Part shown: positions 1-60,812 of the stretch, in pieces | Layout of the letters: every line of letters begins with the position of its first letter | How positions within the stretch are numbered: position 1 is the stretch's first letter | From: Octopus bimaculoides | Taxonomy: Eukaryota | Reading direction: 5' to 3' | DNA: 64,000 nucleotides | Assembly: GCF_001194135.2 (NCBI RefSeq) | Contig: NC_068984.1 | Coordinates: 89,389,641 to 89,453,640 of the forward strand | Notes under the pieces: generated by a model | Seen by the model: only the letters and a program-made list of their open reading frames with translations | Databases searched by the model: none | Told to the model about the DNA's origin: nothing | Made by a program: the position numbers and the translations under genes

Positions 1-218
1 ACTGGCTCATGTGCGGCGACACATGATATCTTTCGAGTGCCCCCGGACTGGCTCATGTGCGGGTGACACATGAAATCTTTCGAGCGGGATCGTTGCCAGT
101 GCCCCTGGACTGGCTCATGTGCGGCGACACATGATATCTTTCGAGTGCCCCCGGACTGGCTCATGTGCGGGCGACACATGATATCTTTCGTGCGAGATCG
201 TTGCCAGTGCCCCTGGAC
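1..218 (-). repeat. Tandem array of the 62-bp structured repeat, alternating 46-bp and 62-bp units (108-bp higher-order period); cut by window start
   Basis: ACTGGCTCATGTG restarts at 1, 47, 109, 155; reverse complement of the array at 2712-3587. Confidence 0.95.
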
Positions 219-354
219 ACACAACATATACACACATACATATATATATACATATATACGATGGGCTTCTTTCAGTTTCCATCTACCAAATCCACTCACA
301 AGGCTTTGGTCGGCCCGAGGCTATAGTAGAAGGCACTTGCCCAAGGTGCCACGC
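219..354 (-). mobile_element. tRNA-derived SINE family 1, partial (runs into gap)
   Basis: Near-identical to 49560-49700 (…AAATCCACTCAC(A/G)AGGCTTTGGTCGGCCCGAGGCTATAGTAGAAG…CACTTGCCCAAGGTGCCACGC). Confidence 0.9.
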
Positions 355-1849
355 NNNNNNNNNNNNNNNNNNNNNNNNNNNNNNNNNNNNNNNNNNNNNN
401 NNNNNNNNNNNNNNNNNNNNNNNNNNNNNNNNNNNNNNNNNNNNNNNNNNNNNNNNNNNNNNNNNNNNNNNNNNNNNNNNNNNNNNNNNNNNNNNNNNNN
501 NNNNNNNNNNNNNNNNNNNNNNNNNNNNNNNNNNNNNNNNNNNNNNNNNNNNNNNNNNNNNNNNNNNNNNNNNNNNNNNNNNNNNNNNNNNNNNNNNNNN
601 NNNNNNNNNNNNNNNNNNNNNNNNNNNNNNNNNNNNNNNNNNNNNNNNNNNNNNNNNNNNNNNNNNNNNNNNNNNNNNNNNACAAGTATACAAATAAAAA
701 ATAAAAATAGAAAATAAAAGTTAGAAAAAAAAAAAATAAAGAGTATAAAAACTAATATGAAAAATATAAAAGATAACAAAAGAACACAAAAAGTAAATGC
801 AACAGCATATGTGAAAAAAGAAGAAAGAAGAAAAGTTAAAAAAGGGAAAAAGAAAAAGAAAAAGGTGGAAGGTAAGAAGACAAAAAGTAGTTCAAAATGG
901 TAGTGAGAAGAGATTAGTCTATCAGGAATAAAGAAATGGAATATTTTTAGGAGTGGTCAAGAATGTTGTTGAGTTCTTGTTAAAAGAACCACAACCTGTT
1001 CACTGACAAAATTTGGCACTGCGACTGCGAGAGTAACAGTTAGTTCATGACATATATGTGTTTATGTATATATGTATGTATGTATATGCGTACATTTGCA
1101 TGCGTGCATATACGTATGTATGTATGTATGTATGTATGTATGTATGTATGTATGTATGCAATTGCTCCTCTTTAGTACATCTTATGATATTCAGAACAAC
1201 TCATAACACGTGGATGTAAGTACCATAAAAGCCTTATCTCCAGATGTTTGATGAGCATTCAAACAATAGACCTGTGTTGATTCCACAGTGCTACAAAAGA
1301 ATCATCTCTTAAGGCCATAAGGACTTCCAGATGACATTGAGTCATCAAGAACAACATATGCTTTCATGTGATGAATTTTTATATCCTTTTCTGTGGTTGT
1401 GATGGTATTAGATATACAAAGGAGTTTTCAGATTTTAGAGAATTTTGCATAATTGTGAATTTAAAACCCTCATAATTATAGCAGATGTATTTAGTCTTCC
1501 ATTTTTCCTGTAATGGTTATATGTAGTTGTTTATTGATATGCTGTGCTTCAGTTGAGATATAGACAGATTAAAGTTTGATTGTTGGGGGTCACCAAGTGT
1601 GTAATGGATTTGTTAGAAGTCCAAGGAATAAATGACAGGAGAAAAATAATAGTTAAAATGAACTTTATTTTACTGTTATGATATAAAAGACAGCTACTTC
1701 ATGTATAATGATAAGTAGATGTTCTGTTGAACATTTGCATGTAATTGTGTTCATCTGGATGACAGCTAGAAGAAGGGGAGATAGAAAGAGTGAGAGAATT
1801 TACCTCTTTGGATTGACGAGTAGAGAGTATGGAAGTTGAATAGTCCCTT

Positions 1850-2190
1850 GGTGACACGCAAGAGGTGCTTTTTCCATCAGGTGCCAGGTGAAAGATCCAG
1901 AATTGAATTTGGGCTCTGTATTTATAATTTTTTCCTACTGAAATTAGGTCAGGATAAACAAAGGATTTTCTTTCTGTTATCTTGTCTAAACTGTATTTAG
2001 CCTAAGGATCTTCAGGAAACAATAGGACATATCTAAATATGATAGTTGACTCTGATAAATTTCTTTGTACAAATGCTGGGCACATTAGGAAGGGATTCAT
2101 AAAAAAAATTTAATTGGGTTTCGAATCCTGGTTAAAAATCCTGTGAGCGATTCGCTTCACTCCAAAAGTGAGAGAATACAAACATCTGAT
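1850..2190 (-). mobile_element. Possible heavily decayed LINE post-RT region (CR1/I-group-like)
   Basis: Minus-strand fragments resembling KANR and LYK..I.SQLSY (cf. LYKALVRSxLEY); many stops and frameshifts. Confidence 0.25.
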
Positions 2191-2214
2191 TCCTAAATAA
2201 AACTAGTCTAGGTA

Positions 2215-2711
2215 TAACTAAAAATTTACTGAGGGCTTAACCCTTACAGCAATAACAACAAAAATTTACCACAAATTGTTGCTGAACCATATGTAGCATG
2301 AACTGGAGAAGGTTTTTTCTAAGAAGCCAAAACGAATTTTAAAAAAATCAGTCTGCTGTTGGGTGGATTTCATTGATCTGGAAGGAGTCTGGGCAAACAT
2401 ACTTTAAGCTATCTTACTGCTTGTAGACTTCTCAAACGATTATGAATTTATTCTATCAGATAAAAATGGAGTAAATTCTTCTAATATAATGCTGTCCCCA
2501 ACAAGTAGTGGTGACAGTAATAATGTTTTATAAGAATAAAAAAACTAAAATTCTTTGTTCTGATGGAGACACTGATTTCTTCATTGATGCTAGAGGATAC
2601 ACATGTACTATTCCTATTTATCAATTGCTGAGTCAACGTCCTTTATATTTCAATTGGGGGATGGGGGTTAAATATGAAAGAACTTGGCTTCACTCTAAAC
2701 AAGATCCCCTC
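2215..2711 (+). mobile_element. RTE-X LINE reverse transcriptase fragment, part 1 (pseudogenised)
   Basis: Decayed motifs NY*GLTLTAITTKIY, EGVWANIL*AILLLVDFS, ME*ILLI..VTVIMFYKNKKTKILCSDGDTDFF match RTE-X NYRGITLTAIAAKIY / EGVRAKNLEAILLFVDFSKAFD / MLYKNTKAxVRSPDGDTDFF. Confidence 0.8.
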
Positions 2712-3587
2712 GTCCAGGGGCACTGGCAACGATCCCGCTCGAAAGATTTCATGTGTCACCCGCACAAGGGCCAGTCCAGTGGCACTGGCAACGATCCCGC
2801 TCGAAAGATCNNNNNNNNNNNNNNNNNNNNNNNNNNNNNNNNNNNNNNNNNNNNNNNNNNNNNNNNNNNNNNNNNNNNNNNNNNNNNNNNNNNNNNNNNN
2901 NNNNNNNNNNNNNNNNNNNNNNNNNNNNNNNNNNNNNNNNNNNNNNNNNNNNNNNNNNNNNNNNNNNNNNNNNNNNNNNNNNNNNNNNNNNNNNNNNNNN
3001 NNNNNNNNNNNNNNNNNNNNNNNNNNNNNNNNNNNNNNNNNNNNNNNNNNNNNNNNNNNNNNNNNNNNNNNNNNNNNNNNNNNNNNNNNNNNNNNNNNNN
3101 NNNNNNNNNNNNNNNNNNNNNNNNNNNNNNNNNNNNNNNNNNNNNNNNNNNNNNNNNNNNNNNNNNNNNNNNNNNNNNNNNNNNNNNNNNNNNNNNNNNN
3201 NNNNNNNNNNNNNNNNNNNNNNNNNNNNNNNNNNNNNNNNNNNNNNNNNNNNNNNNNNNNATCTCGCTCGAAAGATTTCATGTGTCGCCCGCACATGAGC
3301 CAGTCCAGGGGCAATGGCATCGATCCCGCTCGAAAGATTTCATGTGTCTCCCGCACATGAGCCAGTCTATGGGCACTGGCAACGATCCCGCTCGAAACAT
3401 TTCATGTGTCACTCGCACAAGAGCCAGTCCAGGGGCACTGGCAACGATCCTGCTCGAAAGATTTCATGTGTCGCCCGCACATGAGCCAGTCCAGGGGCAC
3501 TGGCAACGATCCCGCTCGAAAGATTTCATGTGTCACCCGCACAAGGGCCAGTCCAGTGGCACTGGCAACGATCCCGCTCGAAAGATC
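2712..3587 (+). repeat. Tandem array of 62-bp structured repeat (contains 450-N gap), flanked by 14-bp direct repeat AAGATCCCCTCGTC
   Basis: Unit GTCCAGGGGCACTGGCAACGATCCCGCTCGAAAGATTTCATGTGTCGCCCGCACATGAGCCA; period 62 (2712 to 2774); direct repeat at 2701-2714 and 3582-3595. Confidence 0.95.
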
Positions 3588-3720
3588 CCCTCGTCACCCA
3601 ACCATATCAATAACAAATGTAGAATATATCAAAGATATTGCTCTCTTTTCAGGCACCATCTCAAAGGTTACCAACCTTCTATTTGAACTTAGAAAAGTAG
3701 AGGCAGATATTGGTCTATAG
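3582..3720 (+). mobile_element. RTE-X RT fragment, part 2 (YADD region)
   Basis: RSPRHPTISITNVEYIKDIALFSGTISKVTNLLFELRKVEADIGL is collinear with RTE-X RSRRYPAQTITDADYADDIALL…AAAGIGL. Confidence 0.8.
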
Positions 3721-3780
3721 GAATATAAAGCAGTTCATAATTATTGTTCTGCATATAAATATTAAAAAGAAAAATAAGTT

Positions 3781-4140
3781 TGTAGTAACGCTGTGCGCAT
3801 GCGTAGTCTCACGCATGCGTGCAATTCAACAACCAAGCTTTCTCGCTTCATTCTGCCTCTTTCTTGTTGGCCAGCGATTGAGCAAGGACGTGTTTAGCTG
3901 TCTCTCTCCATCTTTCGAACTTACGCTAGACAGCTCGCTCACATCTACATACCAACGTCCCAACAACCAAGCTCACACACACAGAAGACGTCTCAACAAA
4001 CAAGAGCTAAAGATGTATATATTTACCACCTGAATAAATGTTGTTATGTTGATAGTCTGGAGTTCAGCGTTCCGTTAATTCTTAATTTTATATAAGAAAG
4101 TCAAGTATACGTCTAATGATGTATAACCCACTTTCCTATA
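3781..4140 (+). repeat. 5' LTR (360 bp)
   Basis: TGTAG start, TATA-like TATATATTT near 4016, AATAAA at 4033-4038, followed by PBS. Confidence 0.85.
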
Positions 4141-4143
4141 AAG

Positions 4144-4157
4144 TGGTGACCCCGGCG
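4144..4157 (+). promoter_or_regulatory. Primer-binding site complementary to tRNA-Trp 3' end
   Basis: TGGTGACCCCGGCG vs canonical Trp PBS TGGTGACCCCGACG (13/14; the mismatch allows G:U). Confidence 0.8.
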
Positions 4158-5637
4158 AAGAAACAAACGCAGCATAGATTCTGGACTACCAACCTATAAC
4201 TGGTGAACCCGACTAAAGAACAAATGCGGCCATGGAGACTGAACTACCAAGCAACGATGACTACCAACGCCATCGACATCTCCAACCATAGTCAACACGA
4301 CTTACTATGTACACCAAACTAAACCACCGCGGCAAATCTCTCTCTTCGATTCTGTTAGGTGACTTAGCTTCACCACGATAATAAACAGACAAGAATTACA
4401 GCCTGCGATACTTCCAATTGTGTACTCAAGAACTTGGTATAAAACTCTCACGTGTACTGACTTTCTATCTGCTGTAATATCTCACATACATATAGACGGC
4501 CTGTCTTTTATTATGTTCTTATATGTCGCATTCACACTCTCACATACACATACATCTTTTATGCCACACTAAATATCTCTTGTTATTCATTTCATACGGT
4601 TGTCTTTTCTATCGTCTCATTACTGGCTATTTATGTTATCGTAATATAACATAATTANNNNNNNNNNNNNNNNNNNNNNNNNNNNNNNNNNNNNNNNNNN
4701 NNNNNNNNNNNNNNNNNNNNNNNNNNNNNNNNNNNNNNNNNNNNNNNNNNNNNNNNNNNNNNNNNNNNNNNNNNNNNNNNNNNNNNNNNNNNNNNNNNNN
4801 NNNNNNNNNNNNNNNNNNNNNNNNNNNNNNNNNNNNNNNNNNNNNNNNNNNNNNNNNNNNNNNNNNNNNNNNNNNNNNNNNNNNNNNNNNNNNNNNNNNN
4901 NNNNNNNNNNNNNNNNNNNNNNNNNNNNNNNNNNNNNNNNNNNNNNNNNNNNNNNNNNNNNNNNNNNNNNNNNNNNNNNNNNNNNNNNNNNNNNNNNNNN
5001 NNNNNNNNNNNNNNNNNNNNNNNNNNNNNNNNNNNNNNNNNNNNNNNNNNNNNNNNNNNNNNNNNNNNNNNNNNNNNNNNNNNNNNNNNNNNNNNNNNNN
5101 NNNNNNNNNNNNNNNNNNNNNNNNNNNNNNNNNNNNNNNNNNNNNNNNNNNNNNNNNNNNNNNNNNNNNNNNNNNNNNNNNNNNNNNNNNNNNNNNNNNN
5201 NNNNNNNNNNNNNNNNNNNNNNNNNNNNNNNNNNNNNNNNNNNNNNNNNNNNNNNNNNNNNNNNNNNNNNNNNNNNNNNNNNNNNNNNNNNNNNNNNNNN
5301 NNNNNNNNNNNNNNNNNNNNNNNNNNNNNNNNNNNNNNNNNNNNNNNNNNNNNNNNNNNNNNNNNNNNNNNNNNNNNNNNNNNNNNNNNNNNNNNNNNNN
5401 NNNNNNNNNNNNNNNNNNNCATTCCGTGATTCCAGTTCCTGGACAGTAGTCATCACGATTTGTTTTCTCATTGTCTCATTTGTTTTTTACTAGGTGGCAT
5501 TTACTGCCCATATTGCATGTTTTTCTTTCATTCCTTCAATTTGTACATTGCATGCATGTATCACACGAGTCTACATTTCATTTCTTTCATTTTTCTTTGT
5601 GTGTGTTTGTGCTACATCTTGTGGGTGGTTTTCAGTG

Positions 5638-15604: not shown

Positions 15605-15787
15605 TAACAGCATGGCTGTGTGATTAAGAAGCTCGCTCTGTAACAACATAGTTTCGGGTTCAGTACCACTGCGCGACACGTTGGGCAAGTGTCTCCTACT
15701 ATTGCCCTGAGTCGAAGAGTGCCTTACGAGTGACTTTAGTAGACAGAAACCGTGGAAGCCCGTCACGCGTGTGTGCATGTGTGTGCA

Positions 15788-15821
<34 letters not shown>

Positions 15822-15935
15822 GTCTTCGTGTTCTCCACCACCACTTGACAACCGGTGCGGTGTTGTTTTGTTTACGTCCCTGTAGCTTAGTGTTTCGGCA
15901 GAAGTGGCAGATAGAATAAGTACTTAAAAATAAGA
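15605..15935 (+). mobile_element. tRNA-derived SINE family 1
   Basis: Head AGCATGGCTGTGTGATTAAG (A box) … GGTTCAGTACC (B box), internal (TG)n. Confidence 0.85.
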
Positions 15936-16314
15936 ACTGGGGGCAAGTAAAGGATAAAAGAGAAAAAGCTAAAATAAAGAAAAATACATTTGACTTTGAA
16001 TACAGATTTTCAATTGTTGCATTTGCTTTGCAGAGAATAATTTAGGAATTTCGATTTATTATTGTTTTACTTTTATGTATACAACTTTCAGCCGGGGATG
16101 AGGCCATGCTAGGGCACCACCAATTAAGACTTTATATTAAAATACACTTGCTAGAAGCAAAGACATTTTAGTTTTCCAAACTAGAGAGACTGAAATTGGT
16201 GGCTGGCTGGTTGATTAGTTATTCAGTCAGTCAGCTAGTGAGTGAGTTAGCTGGATTGCTAGCTAGCTAGATAAAGGATGACCTGAAACGGATTTACTTA
16301 ATATTTGTTAAATG

Positions 16315-36954: not shown

Positions 36955-38110
36955 ATCGCACTACCCGAAAGACAATGACAATGCACAGTGCACTCCACCC
37001 TAAGGCAAATGTACATAGGCTCTACAGGAAGAGAGGTAAAGGCGGACATGGGCTGATTAGAGTGTATCAACACTGAAAGAAGAAACATGAAAGAATATTT
37101 GATAAGCGTCAAACAAGACCTGCTACGGTATGTTGCTAGTGCAGAAGGAGTTAACAAAAATGGACTTGAGAGTGCTCATGAATTCCGATCACGAATAGCC
37201 AACGAGAGAGAAGAAACACTACTCCGTATGGAATTACATGGTCAGTTCCACCGTGAAACCAACAAATTAAAAAACCAGGAAGCATCATGGAAGTGGCTCA
37301 ACAAGGGTGACCTAAAAAAGAATACTGAAAGCCTAAACATCGCTGCCCAGGATCAGGCATTGGTTACCAACTCAGTGAAAAAGAATGTATACCACACAAG
37401 TGCAACGGACCACTGCAGAATGTGTGGGAAGAGGGTCGAAAGCGTAACTCACATTGTTAGTGCTTGTGAAAGTCTTGCACAGAAATAGTACAAGCGTAGA
37501 CACGACAAGGTAGCCCAAAACCTGCACTGGCTACTATGCCGTAAGTATGGATATGAGGCTACAGGTGCTTGGTACCAACATACACCGGAAAAGGTAATGG
37601 ACGAAAAGGGGAAGGCAAAAATCCTCTGGGCTTTGATTTTCAGACAGACAAAGTGTTAGAGCACCGAAGGCCGGATATAGTGGCCTTTAGGAAGGACAAA
37701 CAAGAGTGTCTTGAAGGACAAACAAGAGTGTCATGGCAGTACTAGATCAGCATATCATCATGAATGAAAGAGAAAAGGTTGATAAATATGGGGACCTGAG
37801 AATTGAGATCGCTAAGATGTGACAGCTACGAGTGTCAAACATAAAGTTTATCCCTATTGTCATCGGAGCATTGGGTTCAATAACAACCACTCTGAAAAAC
37901 AAAACATCTGAAAACCTTAGAAATACCCTACAATATAGATGTATTGCAAAAGTCGGCATTACTTGGAACTGCACGCATATTGCGTAAAGTACTATCTATC
38001 TGAGGTCCTTGCTGTGACTTGACAAACAATACAAACCCCCGGTAGACACAATATCTTCAATCAATCAACAACATCACGATATTGTATACTGTGCGACGTC
38101 TATAATAATA
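36955..38110 (+). mobile_element. R4/Dong-like LINE copy C, 5'-truncated, 3' end intact
   Basis: DRTTRKTMTMHSALHPKANVHRLY, ESLNIAAQDQAL, CRMCG…HIVSAC, RHDK, RPD, IPIVIGALG; ends TAATAATA. Confidence 0.9.
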
Positions 38111-42450: not shown

Positions 42451-43744
42451 GCGCCTCTACCTAAAACGGAAACAACGAGGGAGAGGCTTAGCATCGATCC
42501 AAAATACCTTTGAATGTTGCATCATAACCCTTCAGCAACATCTTTTAACCACCAAGTGTCGAAGTGCGTCCCTTGGCCAAGTTTGCATACATGAGGCTGA
42601 TAACATCATAAGACTTGGAAGGCAGCCCCTTGAGCAACACTCTCTGTCTGATAACCTAGAATAGATACCCAAAGAAGCCGCATGTCTCTACTGCAACATA
42701 TCATCAAATGAAAGGGTGAGCCTATATGAGCAGAAGACTATGCATAGATATGTTACTAGAAAGCTCCGTGATGATAGTAACATCGATCATCAAAGCAGTT
42801 TATCAGGGACCAATAGCCGGATTACTACCTCCCACTTTGAAGGGTATGCGTTTGCAATCCAGGAACAGGAAATATCAACCAAGTACCTAATGCACAAAAG
42901 GGATAGAGATGCAGGAAAAGCCGTAAAATGTGACAACCGATGCAGACTTTGTGGAGTTCACACTGAAGATATCACCCACATCATAAGCAGTTGTCCGAAA
43001 ATGTCATCACGGTATTATCTACCAATGAGACATGATGTTGTAGCTAGGACACTCTATAATGAAATCCGTCAGAAGGATAATCCCGAAGACAAAGAAATAA
43101 GAACCCACAATATGGTAGAAGCCATAGCCACTCATAATGAAAAGGAATACTGGTGGAATGTACCAGTGAAGATCTCAATAATATGTAAAAAGAACAGACC
43201 TGATATAATGATTTGGGATAAAGAGAAACTATGCACAGTTGTGGAAATTAGCTGCCCAGCGGATGTTAGCATAAAGCTGAATATCAGTGAAAAAGGGAAC
43301 ACCTATACTGAACTATTGAGAAATCTGCAGGTACTCTATCCAGATTACAAATTCAGGTTTATACCTGTAATTATTGGGGCTCTGGGATATGTAACACACT
43401 GCCTAAATACCAATCTTGAGAAATTAGGCTTCTCAAAACCAGAAAGGAGAAAGCTAATTGGAAGTCTACAGATCCAATTCATCACTAGAACTGTAAAAAT
43501 CTGTAAAACTTTCCAGAAGTCTATTATTTAAATATATATGAGCATCTCTAGATATGTATCTATATGCATGAGAATACATACATAAAACACAGAAATCTGC
43601 ACATACATAATAATACATACATACATACATACATACAAAAATACCCGGTTATTGATGTTGAAGGAACCGTGGATCTAGGTTAGAAACAGGTTCTTTCTCT
43701 ATTGGCAAGAAATCTTGAAAGAAACTGAATAATGACATACATAC
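42451..43744 (+). mobile_element. R4/Dong-related RLE LINE copy D with (TACA)n at both junctions
   Basis: RLYLKRKQRGRGL; EGYAFAIQEQEI; CRLCG…H…C; RHD; RPD…VEISCPAD…EK; IPVIIGALG; 3' UTR ends …TGAATAATGACATACATAC. Confidence 0.85.
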
Positions 43745-47243: not shown

Positions 47244-49374
47244 TAATCCTTGTTTTTTCCAGGCGATGCTATTATGCTAATTAATAATATGTCAAATGTG
47301 TCAATTAGCGGTGTCGTTGATAATTTTTTCCTTACTCTAATGACGCTGGTGACATATATTAGAAGTTCCCTTGTAGAACTATATTCATAAAAAAGTTTAG
47401 AACTATATTATAACCCTCAAATTTGAGAAACAAATATTCATAACTTTTTTCTTTTAAAACTTCATTGCATGAAATTTCGCGAATTGAGCTCTATCATTTA
47501 GGCTTAATTAAAATATAGTTTGTTTTTAAAATAAAGAAGTTAATTATACTTAAATCCAATTTTTTGCCTTACTTATATTTTTTTCCTGATATTTTACTTT
47601 TTGATACAAATTTTTGCTGCATGGGACCAAAACTAGGAAATCCTTCATGTTTTCTTCTATCATTGAAGCTAAGATAAATATATTTTGCTTTTAAAATAAA
47701 AAGAGTTATTTAGATCTAAACTTGATTGGTGACGTTACTTACTCTCCTATAACGTTGCTACAAATTTTGATGTAAACTTTTTTTCTACTGGATCAAATCT
47801 CAATTTGTTTATGCCAAAATGTAACTAGGGACCAGTACTCTTAAAATATGTTAACAGTTTTCAATTTGGCTAAGAAGTGAATTACGGCTGCATGTGAGTA
47901 AATTGCGGCTTTAAGAATATTATTCAACCGCTACCGTAGTTGAATGTTTCATATTGGATTGCCGAAAGTGTTATAGTATCGATTACCATGATAACAGTGT
48001 GCGAGCGCGTGCACGTGTGTGCATAGGCTCATGAATAACGTTGCTGTTGCCGCTATTATTATACAAGCACACGATGTAACTGGTTGGCGAAAATCTATCG
48101 ACTAGCACTCTACAACTACTGGACATCAGCACCTCTTCCCTCCATTTTTGTTTTGTTCCGCCAGCATATCACTCCTACCTAGAACTACGACCTTCTGAAA
48201 CTCATATCTCCTCACATTCTTTTCACGTACAGAAGTTGATGATAAGCATTAGACTGCATAAACCCTTCACCTCAATTTGGGAGGTCCTGCGAAGGAAGTA
48301 GGTACTACGCTGCTCCTGAATAATAAAAATTGCCTTTTCGAAGTTTATAAATGTGTTTTTATGTCTCGTTCATTGATGTTTGGGTGTAGTCATAGGAGAA
48401 TAAGGTTTGTTTTCCACGTGATTATTGGCAGCTAGGAGGAGTGTGGATCAGAACGTGACGTTTGAAGAGACGTTTTTGCAGTTTGCTCGGTGTGGCGTGT
48501 GTTGGTGTGTGTTGTTTTAAGTGTCAAGAGAATTCAGTTATGGCGCTATTGTGTTTCATGTTACTGGCTTTTCTTTTTGAATGCTTGTATTTCTATAATG
48601 TTGTCATGACCTATTTGTGTTCGAATGACGTCTGTGATATCAGTGAATTAGAGAAACATTTGTTTATAAATGTTATGATGTTATCACTATGATTTTGCTT
48701 GTTCTAGGATTGGAAGAGGTTCAGTGTGAAGTTGTTCTGTATTTTATATTACTACTATGGCCTTGGGTGATGATGAGGAATTTCAGCTTCACGAACCTGT
48801 TTATTAAGTCGTTTATGCTGAACTCTATTGATCCGTTTATAAGGTACAATAGGATATAACAGGTTGAGAAACCTCGAAATATTCCTTTGCTGGCCATCTA
48901 TTAAGTCATTAAACCGTGGTCATATTGGGACATTACTTTCCAGGGCTGTGGGTCTTAACCTTTTGTAGCCCAGTATTCTGGTGTTTTTCAATCATCCCAT
49001 CATTATGCAAAAATAAACAAATACAAAAATGAATTAAAGAAAACAGCAGATTATTTTAATCAAACAAGTAAATTTTTCGCAGTACTTTATTATCCACTTT
49101 TTCTTAATCTATCCCATCCAGCATATGCTTCTTTTATGTTTTTTTTTTCTCTCGGTATTTGCGGGAACTAAAGCCCCTTACATTAGACTATTTGAAGGAA
49201 ATTGCTAAAGGAGGCGAAAATCATATAACGAAGTTATATTGGATCTTGGCATATCATTAGACATGTTTCTTTCCACTCACCACACAATAGCCTATTCATG
49301 ATTTACTCTCAAGAAAGATTTTTTGAAATGTTTTTAAAATATAATTATTGCACTTAGTATAAATGTCTTACTAT

Positions 49375-49765
49375 TTGCTCTTTTACTTGTTTCAGTCATT
49401 TGACTGCGGCCATGCCGGAGCACCGCCTTTAGTCGAGTAAATCGACCCCAGGACTTATTCTTTGTAAGCCTAGTATTTATTCTATCGGTCTCTTTTGCCG
49501 AACCGCTAAGTTACGGGGACGTAACCACACCTGCATTGGTTGTCAAGCGATGCTGGGGGACAAACACAGACACACAAACATACATATATATATATACATA
49601 TATACGACGGGCTTCTTTCAGTTTCCGTCTACCAAATCCACTCACGAGGCTTTGGTCGGCCCGAGGCTATAGTAGAAGACACTTGCCCAAGGTGCCACGC
49701 AGTGGGACTGAACCTGGAACCATGTGGTTGGTAAGCAAGCTACTTACCACACAGCCACTCCTGCG
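49375..49765 (-). mobile_element. tRNA-derived SINE family 1, full-length-like
   Basis: Minus-strand head GCAGGAGTGGCTGTGTGG…GGTTCAGTCCC. Confidence 0.9.
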
Positions 49766-49784
49766 TCTTATGTATCTTTTATCT

Positions 49785-50145
49785 TTAACTTGTTTCAGTC
49801 ATTAGACTGCGGGCACGCTGTGGATACCGCCTTGAATAATTTTTTTCAGTTGACTGAATCGACACCAGTACTTTTTTTAAAGCCTGGTACTTATTCTATC
49901 AATCTCTTTTGCTGAACCGCTAATTTACGGGGATATGAACATACTAGCACTGGTTGTCAAGCAGTGTTGGGGAAACACACACGCACACACACACGCGCGC
50001 GCGACGGGTTGATTTCAGTTTCCATCTACCAAATCCACTCACAAGGCTTTATTCGGCTCGAAGCTATAACAGAAGTGTCAAGGTGTCATGCGGAATCATG
50101 TGGTTGGGAAGCAAGCTTCTTACCACATAGTTACGCCTGTGCCTA
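49785..50145 (-). mobile_element. tRNA-derived SINE family 1, older adjacent copy
   Basis: Collinear with 49375-49765, more diverged. Confidence 0.8.
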
Positions 50146-55823: not shown

Positions 55824-55979
55824 TTAACCCTAACCTCTAATCCTAAGCCCTTACTTTAATGCTAAACCTAAAACTTAACCCTAAGCCCCGAATCTAACTA
55901 ACCCTTAATCTTAAACTTCAACCCTAACCCTAACTCTAAACATTGATGCTAATCCTAAACCTTAACACTAACCCCTAAA
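55824..55979 (+). repeat. Degenerate (TAACCC)n-like tract
   Basis: TTAACCCTAACC…CAACCCTAACCCTAAC…CTAACCCCTAA with ~6-nt periodicity. Confidence 0.7.
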
Positions 55980-57263: not shown

Positions 57264-57342
<79 letters not shown>

Positions 57343-57401
57343 TATTATTATTATTATCATTATCATCATTATTATTATTATTATTATTATTATCATTATC
57401 A

Positions 57402-57433
<32 letters not shown>
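57264..57433. repeat. (TTA)n microsatellite with ATC variants
   Basis: Direct reading. Confidence 0.95.
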
Positions 57434-57436
<3 letters not shown>

Positions 57437-60709: not shown

Positions 60710-60762
<53 letters not shown>

Positions 60763-60763
60763 A

Positions 60764-60810
<47 letters not shown>
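60710..60810. repeat. (TTA)n microsatellite
   Basis: Direct reading. Confidence 0.95.

Positions 60811-60812
<2 letters not shown>

What the first reader, a model, noticed from the sequence alone, without database searches (positions are those of the whole stretch)
180..240. Second, inverted array ends at exactly the same GTC register, inside a SINE
Seen in sequence: array 1 ends …CCAGTGCCCCTG|GAC|ACACAACATATAC, i.e. on its own strand it begins GTC-CAGGGGCACTGG, the same register as array 2 (2712). The host is a family-1 SINE whose other copy reads …CAGACACACAAACATAC (49568-49585), so GAC/GTC is again shared between host and array. Two insertions 2.5 kb apart, in opposite orientation, share one terminus and one trinucleotide microhomology. 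Inference: the repeat has a biochemically defined end (a cleavage, nicking or priming site at GTC^C), or array 2 was copied locally from the end of array 1.
Basis: partly seen in the sequence, partly recalled or inferred. Interest (0 to 1): 0.7.

Follow-up and report, generated by a model that had tools for sequence, protein, structure and literature searches.

The report
Mobile 62-bp octopus repeat, shared start
Two nearby, oppositely oriented arrays of a 62-bp octopus tandem repeat do start at the same base of the repeat unit, and one is a true insertion flanked by a 14-bp target duplication. With only two ends visible, a fixed "start site" for the repeat is likely but not proven.

Summary
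Array 1 (1-218, minus strand) and array 2 (2712-3586, plus strand, split by a gap) both lose homology to the 62-bp unit at the same unit position, GTC|CAGGGG. In each case the GTC can also be read as flank sequence. Array 1 abuts the internal microsatellite of a SINE copy that lacks its 3' half.

New here: array 2 is bounded on both sides by the same 14-bp sequence, AAGATCCCCTCGTC (2701-2714 and 3582-3595). Its first 5 nt and last 3 nt are also unit sequence. So array 2 is an insertion with a target duplication and microhomology at both junctions.

The flanks are not degenerate units. No known ribozyme matches, and the two arrays share no carrier-transposon flanks. Array 2 is not a recent copy of the end of array 1 (88% identity; array 1 alternates 46- and 62-bp units).

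At array 1 a 6-nt microhomology was available at another unit position but was not used. This argues mildly for a defined 5' end.

Best reading: a dispersed, mobile satellite-like repeat of Octopus, seeded from a linear intermediate with a fixed 5' end, probably by a retroposition-like route. Chance (about 1/62 to 3/62) and DNA template switching remain open. A genome-wide census of array ends could not be run.

The parts
1..218 (-). Array 1 of the 62-bp repeat. Units alternate 62 and 46 bp, giving a 108-bp higher-order period with 96% identity between the two periods. The array runs off the left edge of the window.
   Evidence: D4
216..218 (-). GAC (GTC on the minus strand). These three bases fit both the repeat unit and the SINE microsatellite as seen in copy A. 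This is the 5' junction of array 1.
219..354 (-). SINE-like repeat: the internal (TATG/TG)n microsatellite at 219-260 and part of the head at 261-354. It is cut by gap 355-681 and lacks the 3' half at the array side. It has the same orientation as array 1.
   Evidence: 91.7% over 144 bp to 49366-49775
2701..2714 (+). Left copy of the 14-bp target duplication AAGATCCCCTCGTC. Its last 3 nt (GTC, 2712-2714) are also unit sequence.
   Evidence: searches show the flank is not a degenerate unit
2715..2810 (+). Array 2, left contig edge: 1.5 units. With GTC 2712-2714 it forms a 99-bp block identical to 3489-3587.
2811..3260 (.). Assembly gap of 450 N inside array 2. The true array length and its middle units are unknown.
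3261..3581 (+). Array 2, right part: 5.3 units of 62 bp with 91% matches. The last array-only base is 3581 (...CGCTCGA).
3582..3595 (+). Right copy of the 14-bp target duplication AAGATCCCCTCGTC. Its first 5 nt (AAGAT) continue the unit.
49366..49775 (-). Full-length reference copy of the SINE: head, microsatellite and 3' half. It was used to place the junction of array 1.

Best explanation
The 62-bp repeat is a dispersed, mobile satellite-like family of Octopus. New arrays are seeded from a linear multi-unit intermediate whose 5' end is fixed at ...GT(C)/CAGGGGCACTGG.

Proposed steps (all inferred):
1. The most likely intermediate is an RNA copied by a LINE reverse transcriptase at a staggered chromosomal nick (target-primed reverse transcription).
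2. The 3' junction forms where the nicked target (AAGAT...) pairs with any ...CUCGAAAGAU in the repeat RNA.
3. Synthesis runs to the 5' end of the RNA.
4. The 5' junction is sealed at a short GTC overlap, and the 14-bp stagger is filled in as a target duplication.
5. At array 1 the same 5' end was joined either to a pre-existing SINE or, by template switching, to a SINE RNA.

Shown: the shared register, the 14-bp duplication, the two microhomologies, the missing SINE half, and the shared orientation of SINE and array 1.

Inferred: the RNA intermediate, the LINE enzyme, and whatever fixes the 5' end.
For: - Register: identical at both 5' ends.
- Target duplication: array 2 is bracketed by an exact 14-bp direct repeat of non-array DNA. 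The flanks and the reconstructed empty site show no significant similarity to the unit. By general knowledge, 14 bp lies in the usual range of LINE-made target duplications.
- 3' junction: the duplication starts with 5 nt that continue the unit. This is the best microhomology available at that flank and is what 3' priming on the target would leave.
- 5' junction of array 1: it ignores a 6-nt microhomology (TGTGTC) at unit position 47 and sits at position 4. This is expected if the end was already fixed.
- SINE context: array 1 and the SINE head are co-oriented and the SINE 3' half is missing. This fits a template switch at the 5' end of the repeat RNA.
- Enzyme source: LINE reverse-transcriptase remnants lie in the same window. 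LINEs and SINEs are reported as abundant and recently active in Octopus (PMC13282606).
- Dispersal: the family occurs elsewhere in the O. bimaculoides genome (UniProt A0A0L8HVX5, a translated array).
- Separate history: arrays 1 and 2 are homogenised separately. Identity is 96% within array 1 but 88-93% between arrays.
Against: - Only two 5' ends and one 3' end are visible, and chance agreement has p about 0.02-0.05.
- There is no poly(A) or other recognisable LINE or SINE 3' tail at the end of array 2.
- The unit shows no similarity to the SINE 3' half or to anything else in the window.
- No promoter, ribozyme or processing signal that could fix an RNA 5' end was found.
- Classical target-primed insertion gives fixed 3' ends and variable 5' ends, which is the reverse of what is proposed here.
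- DNA template switching would produce the same junction pattern.
- The 99-bp identity between the two contig edges of array 2 shows that the assembly there is unreliable.
Confidence: 0.35

Rival explanations
1. DNA-level templated insertion (fork stalling and template switching, microhomology-mediated break-induced replication, or strand annealing at a staggered break). A nascent 3' end ...CCTCGTC left its template and primed on a repeat array through GTC. The donor could be the nearby inverted array 1, another array, or an extrachromosomal circle. Synthesis copied several units, then returned 14 bp behind the departure point through AAGAT. On this reading the shared register is partly a product of the GTC microhomology and partly luck.
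For: - Microhomology is present at both junctions of array 2, together with a short duplication of the target.
- An inverted array of the same family lies about 2.5 kb away, which is the classical geometry for a leading-to-lagging template switch.
- Given a flank ending in GTC, only two unit positions offer 3 nt of microhomology, so register agreement is less surprising.
- Junction patterns of this kind have been described for euchromatic satellites in Drosophila: one shared truncated-monomer junction, a variable other end, and a duplication that includes the microhomology (PMC7403614).
Against: - The visible part of array 1 is not the template. Identity is 88% to its terminal unit, and its 46/62 alternation is absent from array 2.
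- At array 1 the best microhomology (6 nt at unit position 47) was not used.
- A simple re-integrated circle predicts that the first and last partial units add up to one unit. They do not: the array starts at unit position 1-4 and ends at position 31-36.
Confidence: 0.3
2. Coincidence. The two arrays are unrelated in origin, whatever mechanism made them, and happen to end in the same register. Nothing is special about GTC|CAGGGG.
For: - Only two ends are available, and exact agreement has p about 1/62.
- No cleavage, nicking or promoter motif was found at the site.
- In Tribolium, satellite array ends showed no regular pattern genome-wide (PMC11610590).
Against: - Agreement is exact to the base and includes the same 3-nt overlap.
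- Array 1 did not use the better microhomology that was available.
Confidence: 0.25
3. Assembly artefact. The inverted arrangement, the array 1/SINE junction or the structure of array 2 results from mis-scaffolding, a mis-join in low-complexity sequence, or a gap-edge duplication.
For: - Gaps lie at 355-681 and 2811-3260.
- 2712-2810 is 99/99 identical to 3489-3587, while neighbouring units differ by 3-13% (2-8 of 62 positions).
- The left contig ends in AAGATC, the variant that leads into the right flank.
- The array 1/SINE junction lies in a 42-bp microsatellite.
Against: - The two informative junctions of array 2 (X|CAGGGG and CTCGA|X) each lie inside a contig. They share at most 5 nt with unit sequence, too little for a k-mer graph to join by mistake.
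- The register of each array end is read within a single contig and does not depend on the scaffolding.
Confidence: 0.1

Closest known systems
Euchromatic satellite dispersal by microhomology-mediated repair or eccDNA (Rsp-like into 1.688 clusters, Drosophila simulans clade; Sproul et al. 2020, PMC7403614)
   Same: - Short arrays are inserted at new sites.
- One end of the cluster has an identically truncated monomer at several sites, while the other end varies.
- The junctions show microhomology.
- Some insertions are flanked by a duplication of target sequence that includes the microhomology.
   Different: In Drosophila the shared junction travels with flanking 1.688 sequence as a hybrid repeat that spreads into existing 1.688 clusters. 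Here the two flanks, a SINE microsatellite and unique DNA, share only GTC. The Drosophila microhomology is 4-7 nt; here it is 3 nt at the shared end.
Tandem repeats carried as the central part of non-autonomous transposons (Helentron-derived Cg_HINE in oyster, PMC7492417; DINE-1 and pearl elements)
   Same: These are mollusc genomes with many short satellite-like arrays scattered in euchromatin. Array orientation and start are fixed relative to the carrier.
   Different: HINE arrays sit between conserved left and right flanks of 50-100 bp that contain subterminal inverted repeats and a palindrome. Here homology between the two loci stops at the first array base. Array 2 is bounded directly by a 14-bp target duplication, which Helitron-type elements do not make. 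The HINE units surveyed were 100-500 bp; this unit is 62 bp.
LINE-mediated retroposition of non-autonomous RNAs, including VNTR-bearing composites (human SVA) and chimeric retrocopies made by template switching (U6-L1 type) (from general knowledge)
   Same: A target duplication in the 7-20-bp range, microhomology at the priming junction, a tandem-repeat block mobilised as RNA, and a 5' partner joined in the same orientation at the 5' end of the first template.
   Different: There is no poly(A) or LINE-like 3' tail, no non-repeat body, and no evidence of transcription. The fixed end is the 5' end, not the 3' end.
Fork stalling and template switching / microhomology-mediated break-induced replication (from general knowledge; cited in PMC7403614)
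   Same: A templated insertion with 3-5 nt of microhomology at both switches, a small duplication at the return point, and an inverted donor nearby.
   Different: The visible part of the nearby array is not the template (88% identity). The model does not predict a common register.

Membership tests
SINE (host of array 1) | Short interspersed multi-copy element with internal pol III A and B boxes | tested here: met
   The window holds four copies: 219-354, 15613-15950, 49366-49775 and 49784-50135. By eye, the head carries TGGCTGTGTGG (A-box-like) and GGTTCAGTCCC (B-box-like). Neither Rfam nor ARAGORN calls a tRNA, so tRNA ancestry is not shown.
SINE (host of array 1) | Array lies inside the element, with both SINE halves and a target duplication flanking the array | not testable with these tools
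   The left end of array 1 lies outside the window. Look-ups for the source contig failed.
Self-cleaving ribozyme repeat (hammerhead or other; GUC cleavage site) | Match to a ribozyme covariance model, with the conserved catalytic core | tested here: not met
   No ribozyme family reached E <= 10 in 1-4400 on either strand. By eye, the CUGANGA core is absent on both strands. The folding z-score of the unit is only -0.3 to -1.7.
Helitron / Helentron-carried array (HINE) | Conserved left and right flanking modules shared by all copies, and no target duplication | tested here: not met
   Homology between the two loci ends at 218 and 2712. A 14-bp duplication directly bounds array 2.
LINE-mediated retroposed element | Target-site duplication of about 7-20 bp flanking the insert | tested here: met
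   AAGATCCCCTCGTC lies at 2701-2714 and 3582-3595.
LINE-mediated retroposed element | Defined 3' tail shared with a partner LINE, and an RNA intermediate | tested here: inconclusive
   Only one 3' end is visible. It has no poly(A), and a profile search found no similarity of the unit to anything else in the window. Transcription cannot be tested.
Re-integrated eccDNA (linearised circle of whole units) | First and last partial monomers complement each other to make one monomer | tested here: not met
   Array 2 starts at unit position 1-4 and ends at position 31-36. The length inside the gap is unknown, but the phases are not.
Local template switch from array 1 | Array 2 is a near-identical inverted copy of the adjoining part of array 1 | tested here: not met
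   There are 6 differences in 62 bp from the terminal unit of array 1. Array 1 has 46-bp units and array 2 has none. A donor segment further left, outside the window, cannot be excluded.
Foldback-type transposon (arms made of inverted tandem arrays) | One element with inverted repeat-array arms and a target duplication outside both arms only | tested here: inconclusive
   The inverted arrays are present. However, a copy of the duplicated 14-mer lies at the inner boundary of array 2, which marks array 2 as an insertion of its own. The outer end of array 1 is not visible.

The most novel reading that the evidence does not exclude
The 62-bp unit is a self-contained mobile module whose copies start at a specific cut in the loop of its own hairpin (GCCAGT^CCAGGGGC ACTGGC). 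That cut would be a nick site for a rolling-circle (HUH-type) enzyme, or the processing site of an undescribed small self-cleaving or enzyme-cleaved RNA. On this reading, cephalopod genomes would carry a new kind of satellite that transposes as multimers with one defined end.
Probability: 0.1. Interest if true: 0.7.

Novelty: new member of a known kind. Interest (0 to 1): 0.35.

Why it matters
How short satellite-like arrays spread through gene-rich DNA is still debated. Candidate routes are transposon carriers, circular DNA, gene conversion and retroposition.

This locus gives a clean case in a cephalopod. The array sits in unique DNA with an intact 14-bp target duplication and readable microhomologies at both junctions. 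A second array starts at the identical unit position in a different flank.

If a genome-wide census confirmed a fixed 5' end, the family would be a tractable model for satellite mobility. It would also point to a specific cut or start site. If the census did not confirm it, the locus would remain an ordinary example of microhomology-mediated satellite insertion.

The analysis also shows that at least one UniProt "protein" of O. bimaculoides is a translated repeat array.

Tried and rejected
1. Ribozyme or structured RNA at the GTC site. An Rfam scan of 1-4400 at E <= 10 returned only microsatellite-driven miRNA hits. RNA folds of one and two units on both strands gave z-scores of -0.3 to -1.7. 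No tRNA-like gene was found. Rejected.

2. The flanks of array 2, or the duplicated 14-mer, as degenerate repeat units (array born in situ). Local alignments of the left flank, the right flank and the reconstructed empty site against the unit scored no better than shuffles or other window DNA. Rejected.

3. The unit derived from the SINE 3' half. Alignments were not better than shuffles. Rejected.

4. Further copies in the window. A profile search with nhmmer found none outside 1-218 and 2712-3588.

5. Further copies in public data, to census array ends.
   - A metagenome scan with a 23-mer gave two unrelated GC-rich bacterial chance hits.
   - Viral and prokaryotic genome scans gave nothing.
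   - A protein search with the translated unit gave one UniProt entry from O. bimaculoides, but no contig could be retrieved for it.
   - A look-up with a window ORF, meant to extend the window leftward, also failed.

6. Literature. No held paper prints the unit sequence, and no paper on cephalopod satellites describes it.

7. Helitron reading (5' TC, hairpin plus CCAG at the 3' end). The 3' end of array 2 is not at that position and there is a target duplication. Rejected.

8. Inversion of part of a single ancestral array. This predicts neither equal registers nor the direct 14-bp duplication. Rejected.

Full report
**What is there**

The window is a gapped eukaryotic scaffold with ten N runs. 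Translating the repeat unit finds a single database entry, an "uncharacterized protein" of Octopus bimaculoides (UniProt A0A0L8HVX5, 80% identity). The source is therefore this species or a close relative, and the repeat also occurs elsewhere in that genome.

The unit is 62 bp: GTCCAGGGGCACTGGCAACGATCCCGCTCGAAAGATTTCATGTGTCACCCGCACATGAGCCA.

- **Array 1** occupies 1-218 on the minus strand and runs off the left edge of the window. It alternates 62-bp units with 46-bp deletion variants. This gives a 108-bp higher-order period, with 96% identity between the two periods.
- **Array 2** is on the plus strand. It covers 2712-2810, then a 450-N gap, then 3261-3586 (5.3 units, 91% matches).
- A profile search finds no other copy in the 64 kb.

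**Check of the observation**

Read on the unit strand, the two junctions are:

- Array 1: ...TGTTGTGTGTC|CAGGGGCACTGG
- Array 2: ...AAGATCCCCTCGTC|CAGGGGCACTGG

Homology between the two loci ends exactly at 218 and 2712 (I7 and I15). In both arrays the first base that disagrees with the unit is the same unit position. The registers therefore agree to the base, with the same 3-nt overlap, GTC.

The sequence at 219-354 is a SINE-like repeat, 91.7% identical to the copy at 49366-49775. That copy reads ...CAGACACACAAACATAC at the matching place, so GAC can be assigned to host or to array. The other three copies in the window continue from the internal microsatellite into a 3' half of about 190 bp. 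That half is missing where array 1 begins.

With 62 registers, exact agreement of two independent ends has p about 1/62. This is suggestive only: there are two ends, and the coincidence was noticed after the fact.

Array 2 is bracketed by the same 14-mer, AAGATCCCCTCGTC, at 2701-2714 and 3582-3595. This sequence occurs nowhere else in the window.

- Its last three bases (GTC) are the bases that precede CAGGGG in the unit.
- Its first five bases (AAGAT) are the bases that follow CTCGA in the unit.
- The middle six (CCCCTC) are foreign to the unit.

Neither flank, nor the reconstructed empty site, resembles the unit more than shuffled or random window DNA does. Array 2 is therefore a true insertion into unique DNA. 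It carries a 14-bp target duplication, and both junctions formed at microhomologies.

**Assembly cautions**

- The first 99 bp of array 2 (2712-2810) are identical to its last 99 bp (3489-3587), although other units differ from one another at 2-8 of 62 positions.
- The left contig ends in AAGATC, the variant that leads into the right flank.
- The simplest reading is a gap-edge or allelic duplicate. A higher-order period or a terminally redundant copy of a circular template are alternatives.
- The two junctions themselves lie inside contigs and share too few bases with the unit to be graph artefacts.
- The spacing and inverted orientation of the two arrays depend on scaffolding across gap 355-681.
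- The array 1/SINE junction lies in 42 bp of low-complexity sequence.

*(a) Local copying from the end of array 1.* Not supported.
- The first unit of array 2 differs at 6 of 62 positions from the terminal unit of array 1, but at only 2 from an internal one.
- The second unit of array 1 is a 46-mer, and array 2 has none.
- Arm identities are 88% to the terminal unit against 93% to the internal unit.
- A donor further left, outside the window, cannot be excluded.

*(b) A defined end.*
- No known self-cleaving RNA matches. Folding is unremarkable and there is no tRNA-like gene.
- The junction does fall at the 5' edge of the loop of a small hairpin, GCCAGT-CCAGGGGC-ACTGGC. This hairpin is not maintained in the 46-bp variants or in several other units.
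- One piece of positive evidence exists. The (TG)n flank of array 1 could have paired over 6 nt (TGTGTC) at unit position 47. The junction instead sits at position 4, with only 3 nt. A junction chosen purely by microhomology would be expected at position 47.

**Mechanism**

Three facts need explaining:
1. The equal 5' register.
2. The 14-bp duplication, with 5 nt of microhomology at the 3' junction and 3 nt at the 5' junction.
3. Array 1 has the same orientation as a SINE head whose 3' half is missing.

A retroposition-like route covers all three.
- A staggered nick is primed on a multi-unit repeat RNA through AAGAU.
- Copying runs to a fixed RNA 5' end.
- The end is joined at GTC.
- At array 1 the enzyme either landed in an existing SINE or switched templates to a SINE RNA.

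LINE reverse-transcriptase remnants are present in the window. LINEs and SINEs are abundant and recently active in Octopus (PMC13282606). Against this route: there is no recognisable 3' tail, there is no sign of what would fix the RNA 5' end, and the usual rule of fixed 3' ends and variable 5' ends is reversed. I give it 0.35.

DNA template switching, or strand annealing at a staggered break, gives the same junction picture and fits the nearby inverted array. It does not predict the common register, and the visible part of array 1 is not the donor. I give it 0.30. Coincidence gets 0.25 and assembly artefact 0.10.

**Comparison with known systems**

- **Drosophila euchromatic satellites (closest).** The spread of Rsp-like repeats shows one shared truncated-monomer junction with microhomology, a variable other end, and in some clusters a duplication that includes the microhomology (PMC7403614). 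There the shared junction moves together with flanking 1.688 sequence. Here the flanks share only GTC.
- **Oyster satellite-like arrays.** These ride inside Helentron-derived carriers with conserved flanks (PMC7492417). That test fails here.
- **Tribolium satellites.** Genome-wide, array ends showed no regular pattern (PMC11610590). This is a reminder that coincidence is a live option.
- **Simple re-integrated circle.** Not supported, because the end phases do not complement each other.

**Verdict**

The claim of a biochemically defined end rests on two junctions plus one indirect argument.

The decisive census of array ends, and the leftward extension of the window, could not be run. No eukaryotic genome collection was available, and the indirect routes failed.

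I rate this a new member of a known kind, dispersed satellite-like repeats inserted at microhomologies, with moderate interest.

Noticed in passing
window 2712-2810 vs 3489-3587: The 99 bp on the left edge of the gap inside array 2 are identical to the last 99 bp of the array, while other units differ at 2-8 of 62 positions. This may be a gap-closing or allelic duplicate, a higher-order period, or terminal redundancy.
   Followed up: partly
window 49366-50135 (minus strand): Two full-length SINE copies lie head to tail. Each has a head, an internal (TG/TATG)n microsatellite, a 3' half of about 190 bp, and a tail ending ...AAAGA(T/G)...TAAGAC.
   Followed up: partly
window 55825-55979: A degenerate telomere-like tract, (TAACCC/CTAACC)n, about 150 bp long. 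It looks like an interstitial telomeric repeat.
   Followed up: no
window 37087-37488 and 42716-43531: ORFs with weak matches, below Pfam's curated cut-off, to the zinc-binding C-terminal domain of LINE reverse transcriptases (zf-RVT). These are decayed LINE copies.
   Followed up: no
UniProt A0A0L8HVX5_OCTBM (P0001): This 65-aa "uncharacterized protein" of Octopus bimaculoides is a translation of an array of the same repeat family, a variant that appears to have a longer unit. The gene model is almost certainly spurious.
   Followed up: partly
window 30006-30150, 57264-57434, 60710-60811, 34958-35277: Unusually long trinucleotide arrays: (ATA)48, (TTA)57, (TTA)34, and (ATG)n with a 9-bp period over 320 bp.
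   Followed up: no
window 1044-1165 and 214-264: Rfam miRNA matches (mir-3149, mir-297, mir-466 and others) fall entirely on (TATG)n microsatellites and lie far below the gathering scores. They are artefacts of low-complexity sequence.
   Followed up: yes
window 4135-4250: Two copies of an unrelated 57-bp tandem repeat (76% matches) lie 550 bp downstream of array 2.
   Followed up: no
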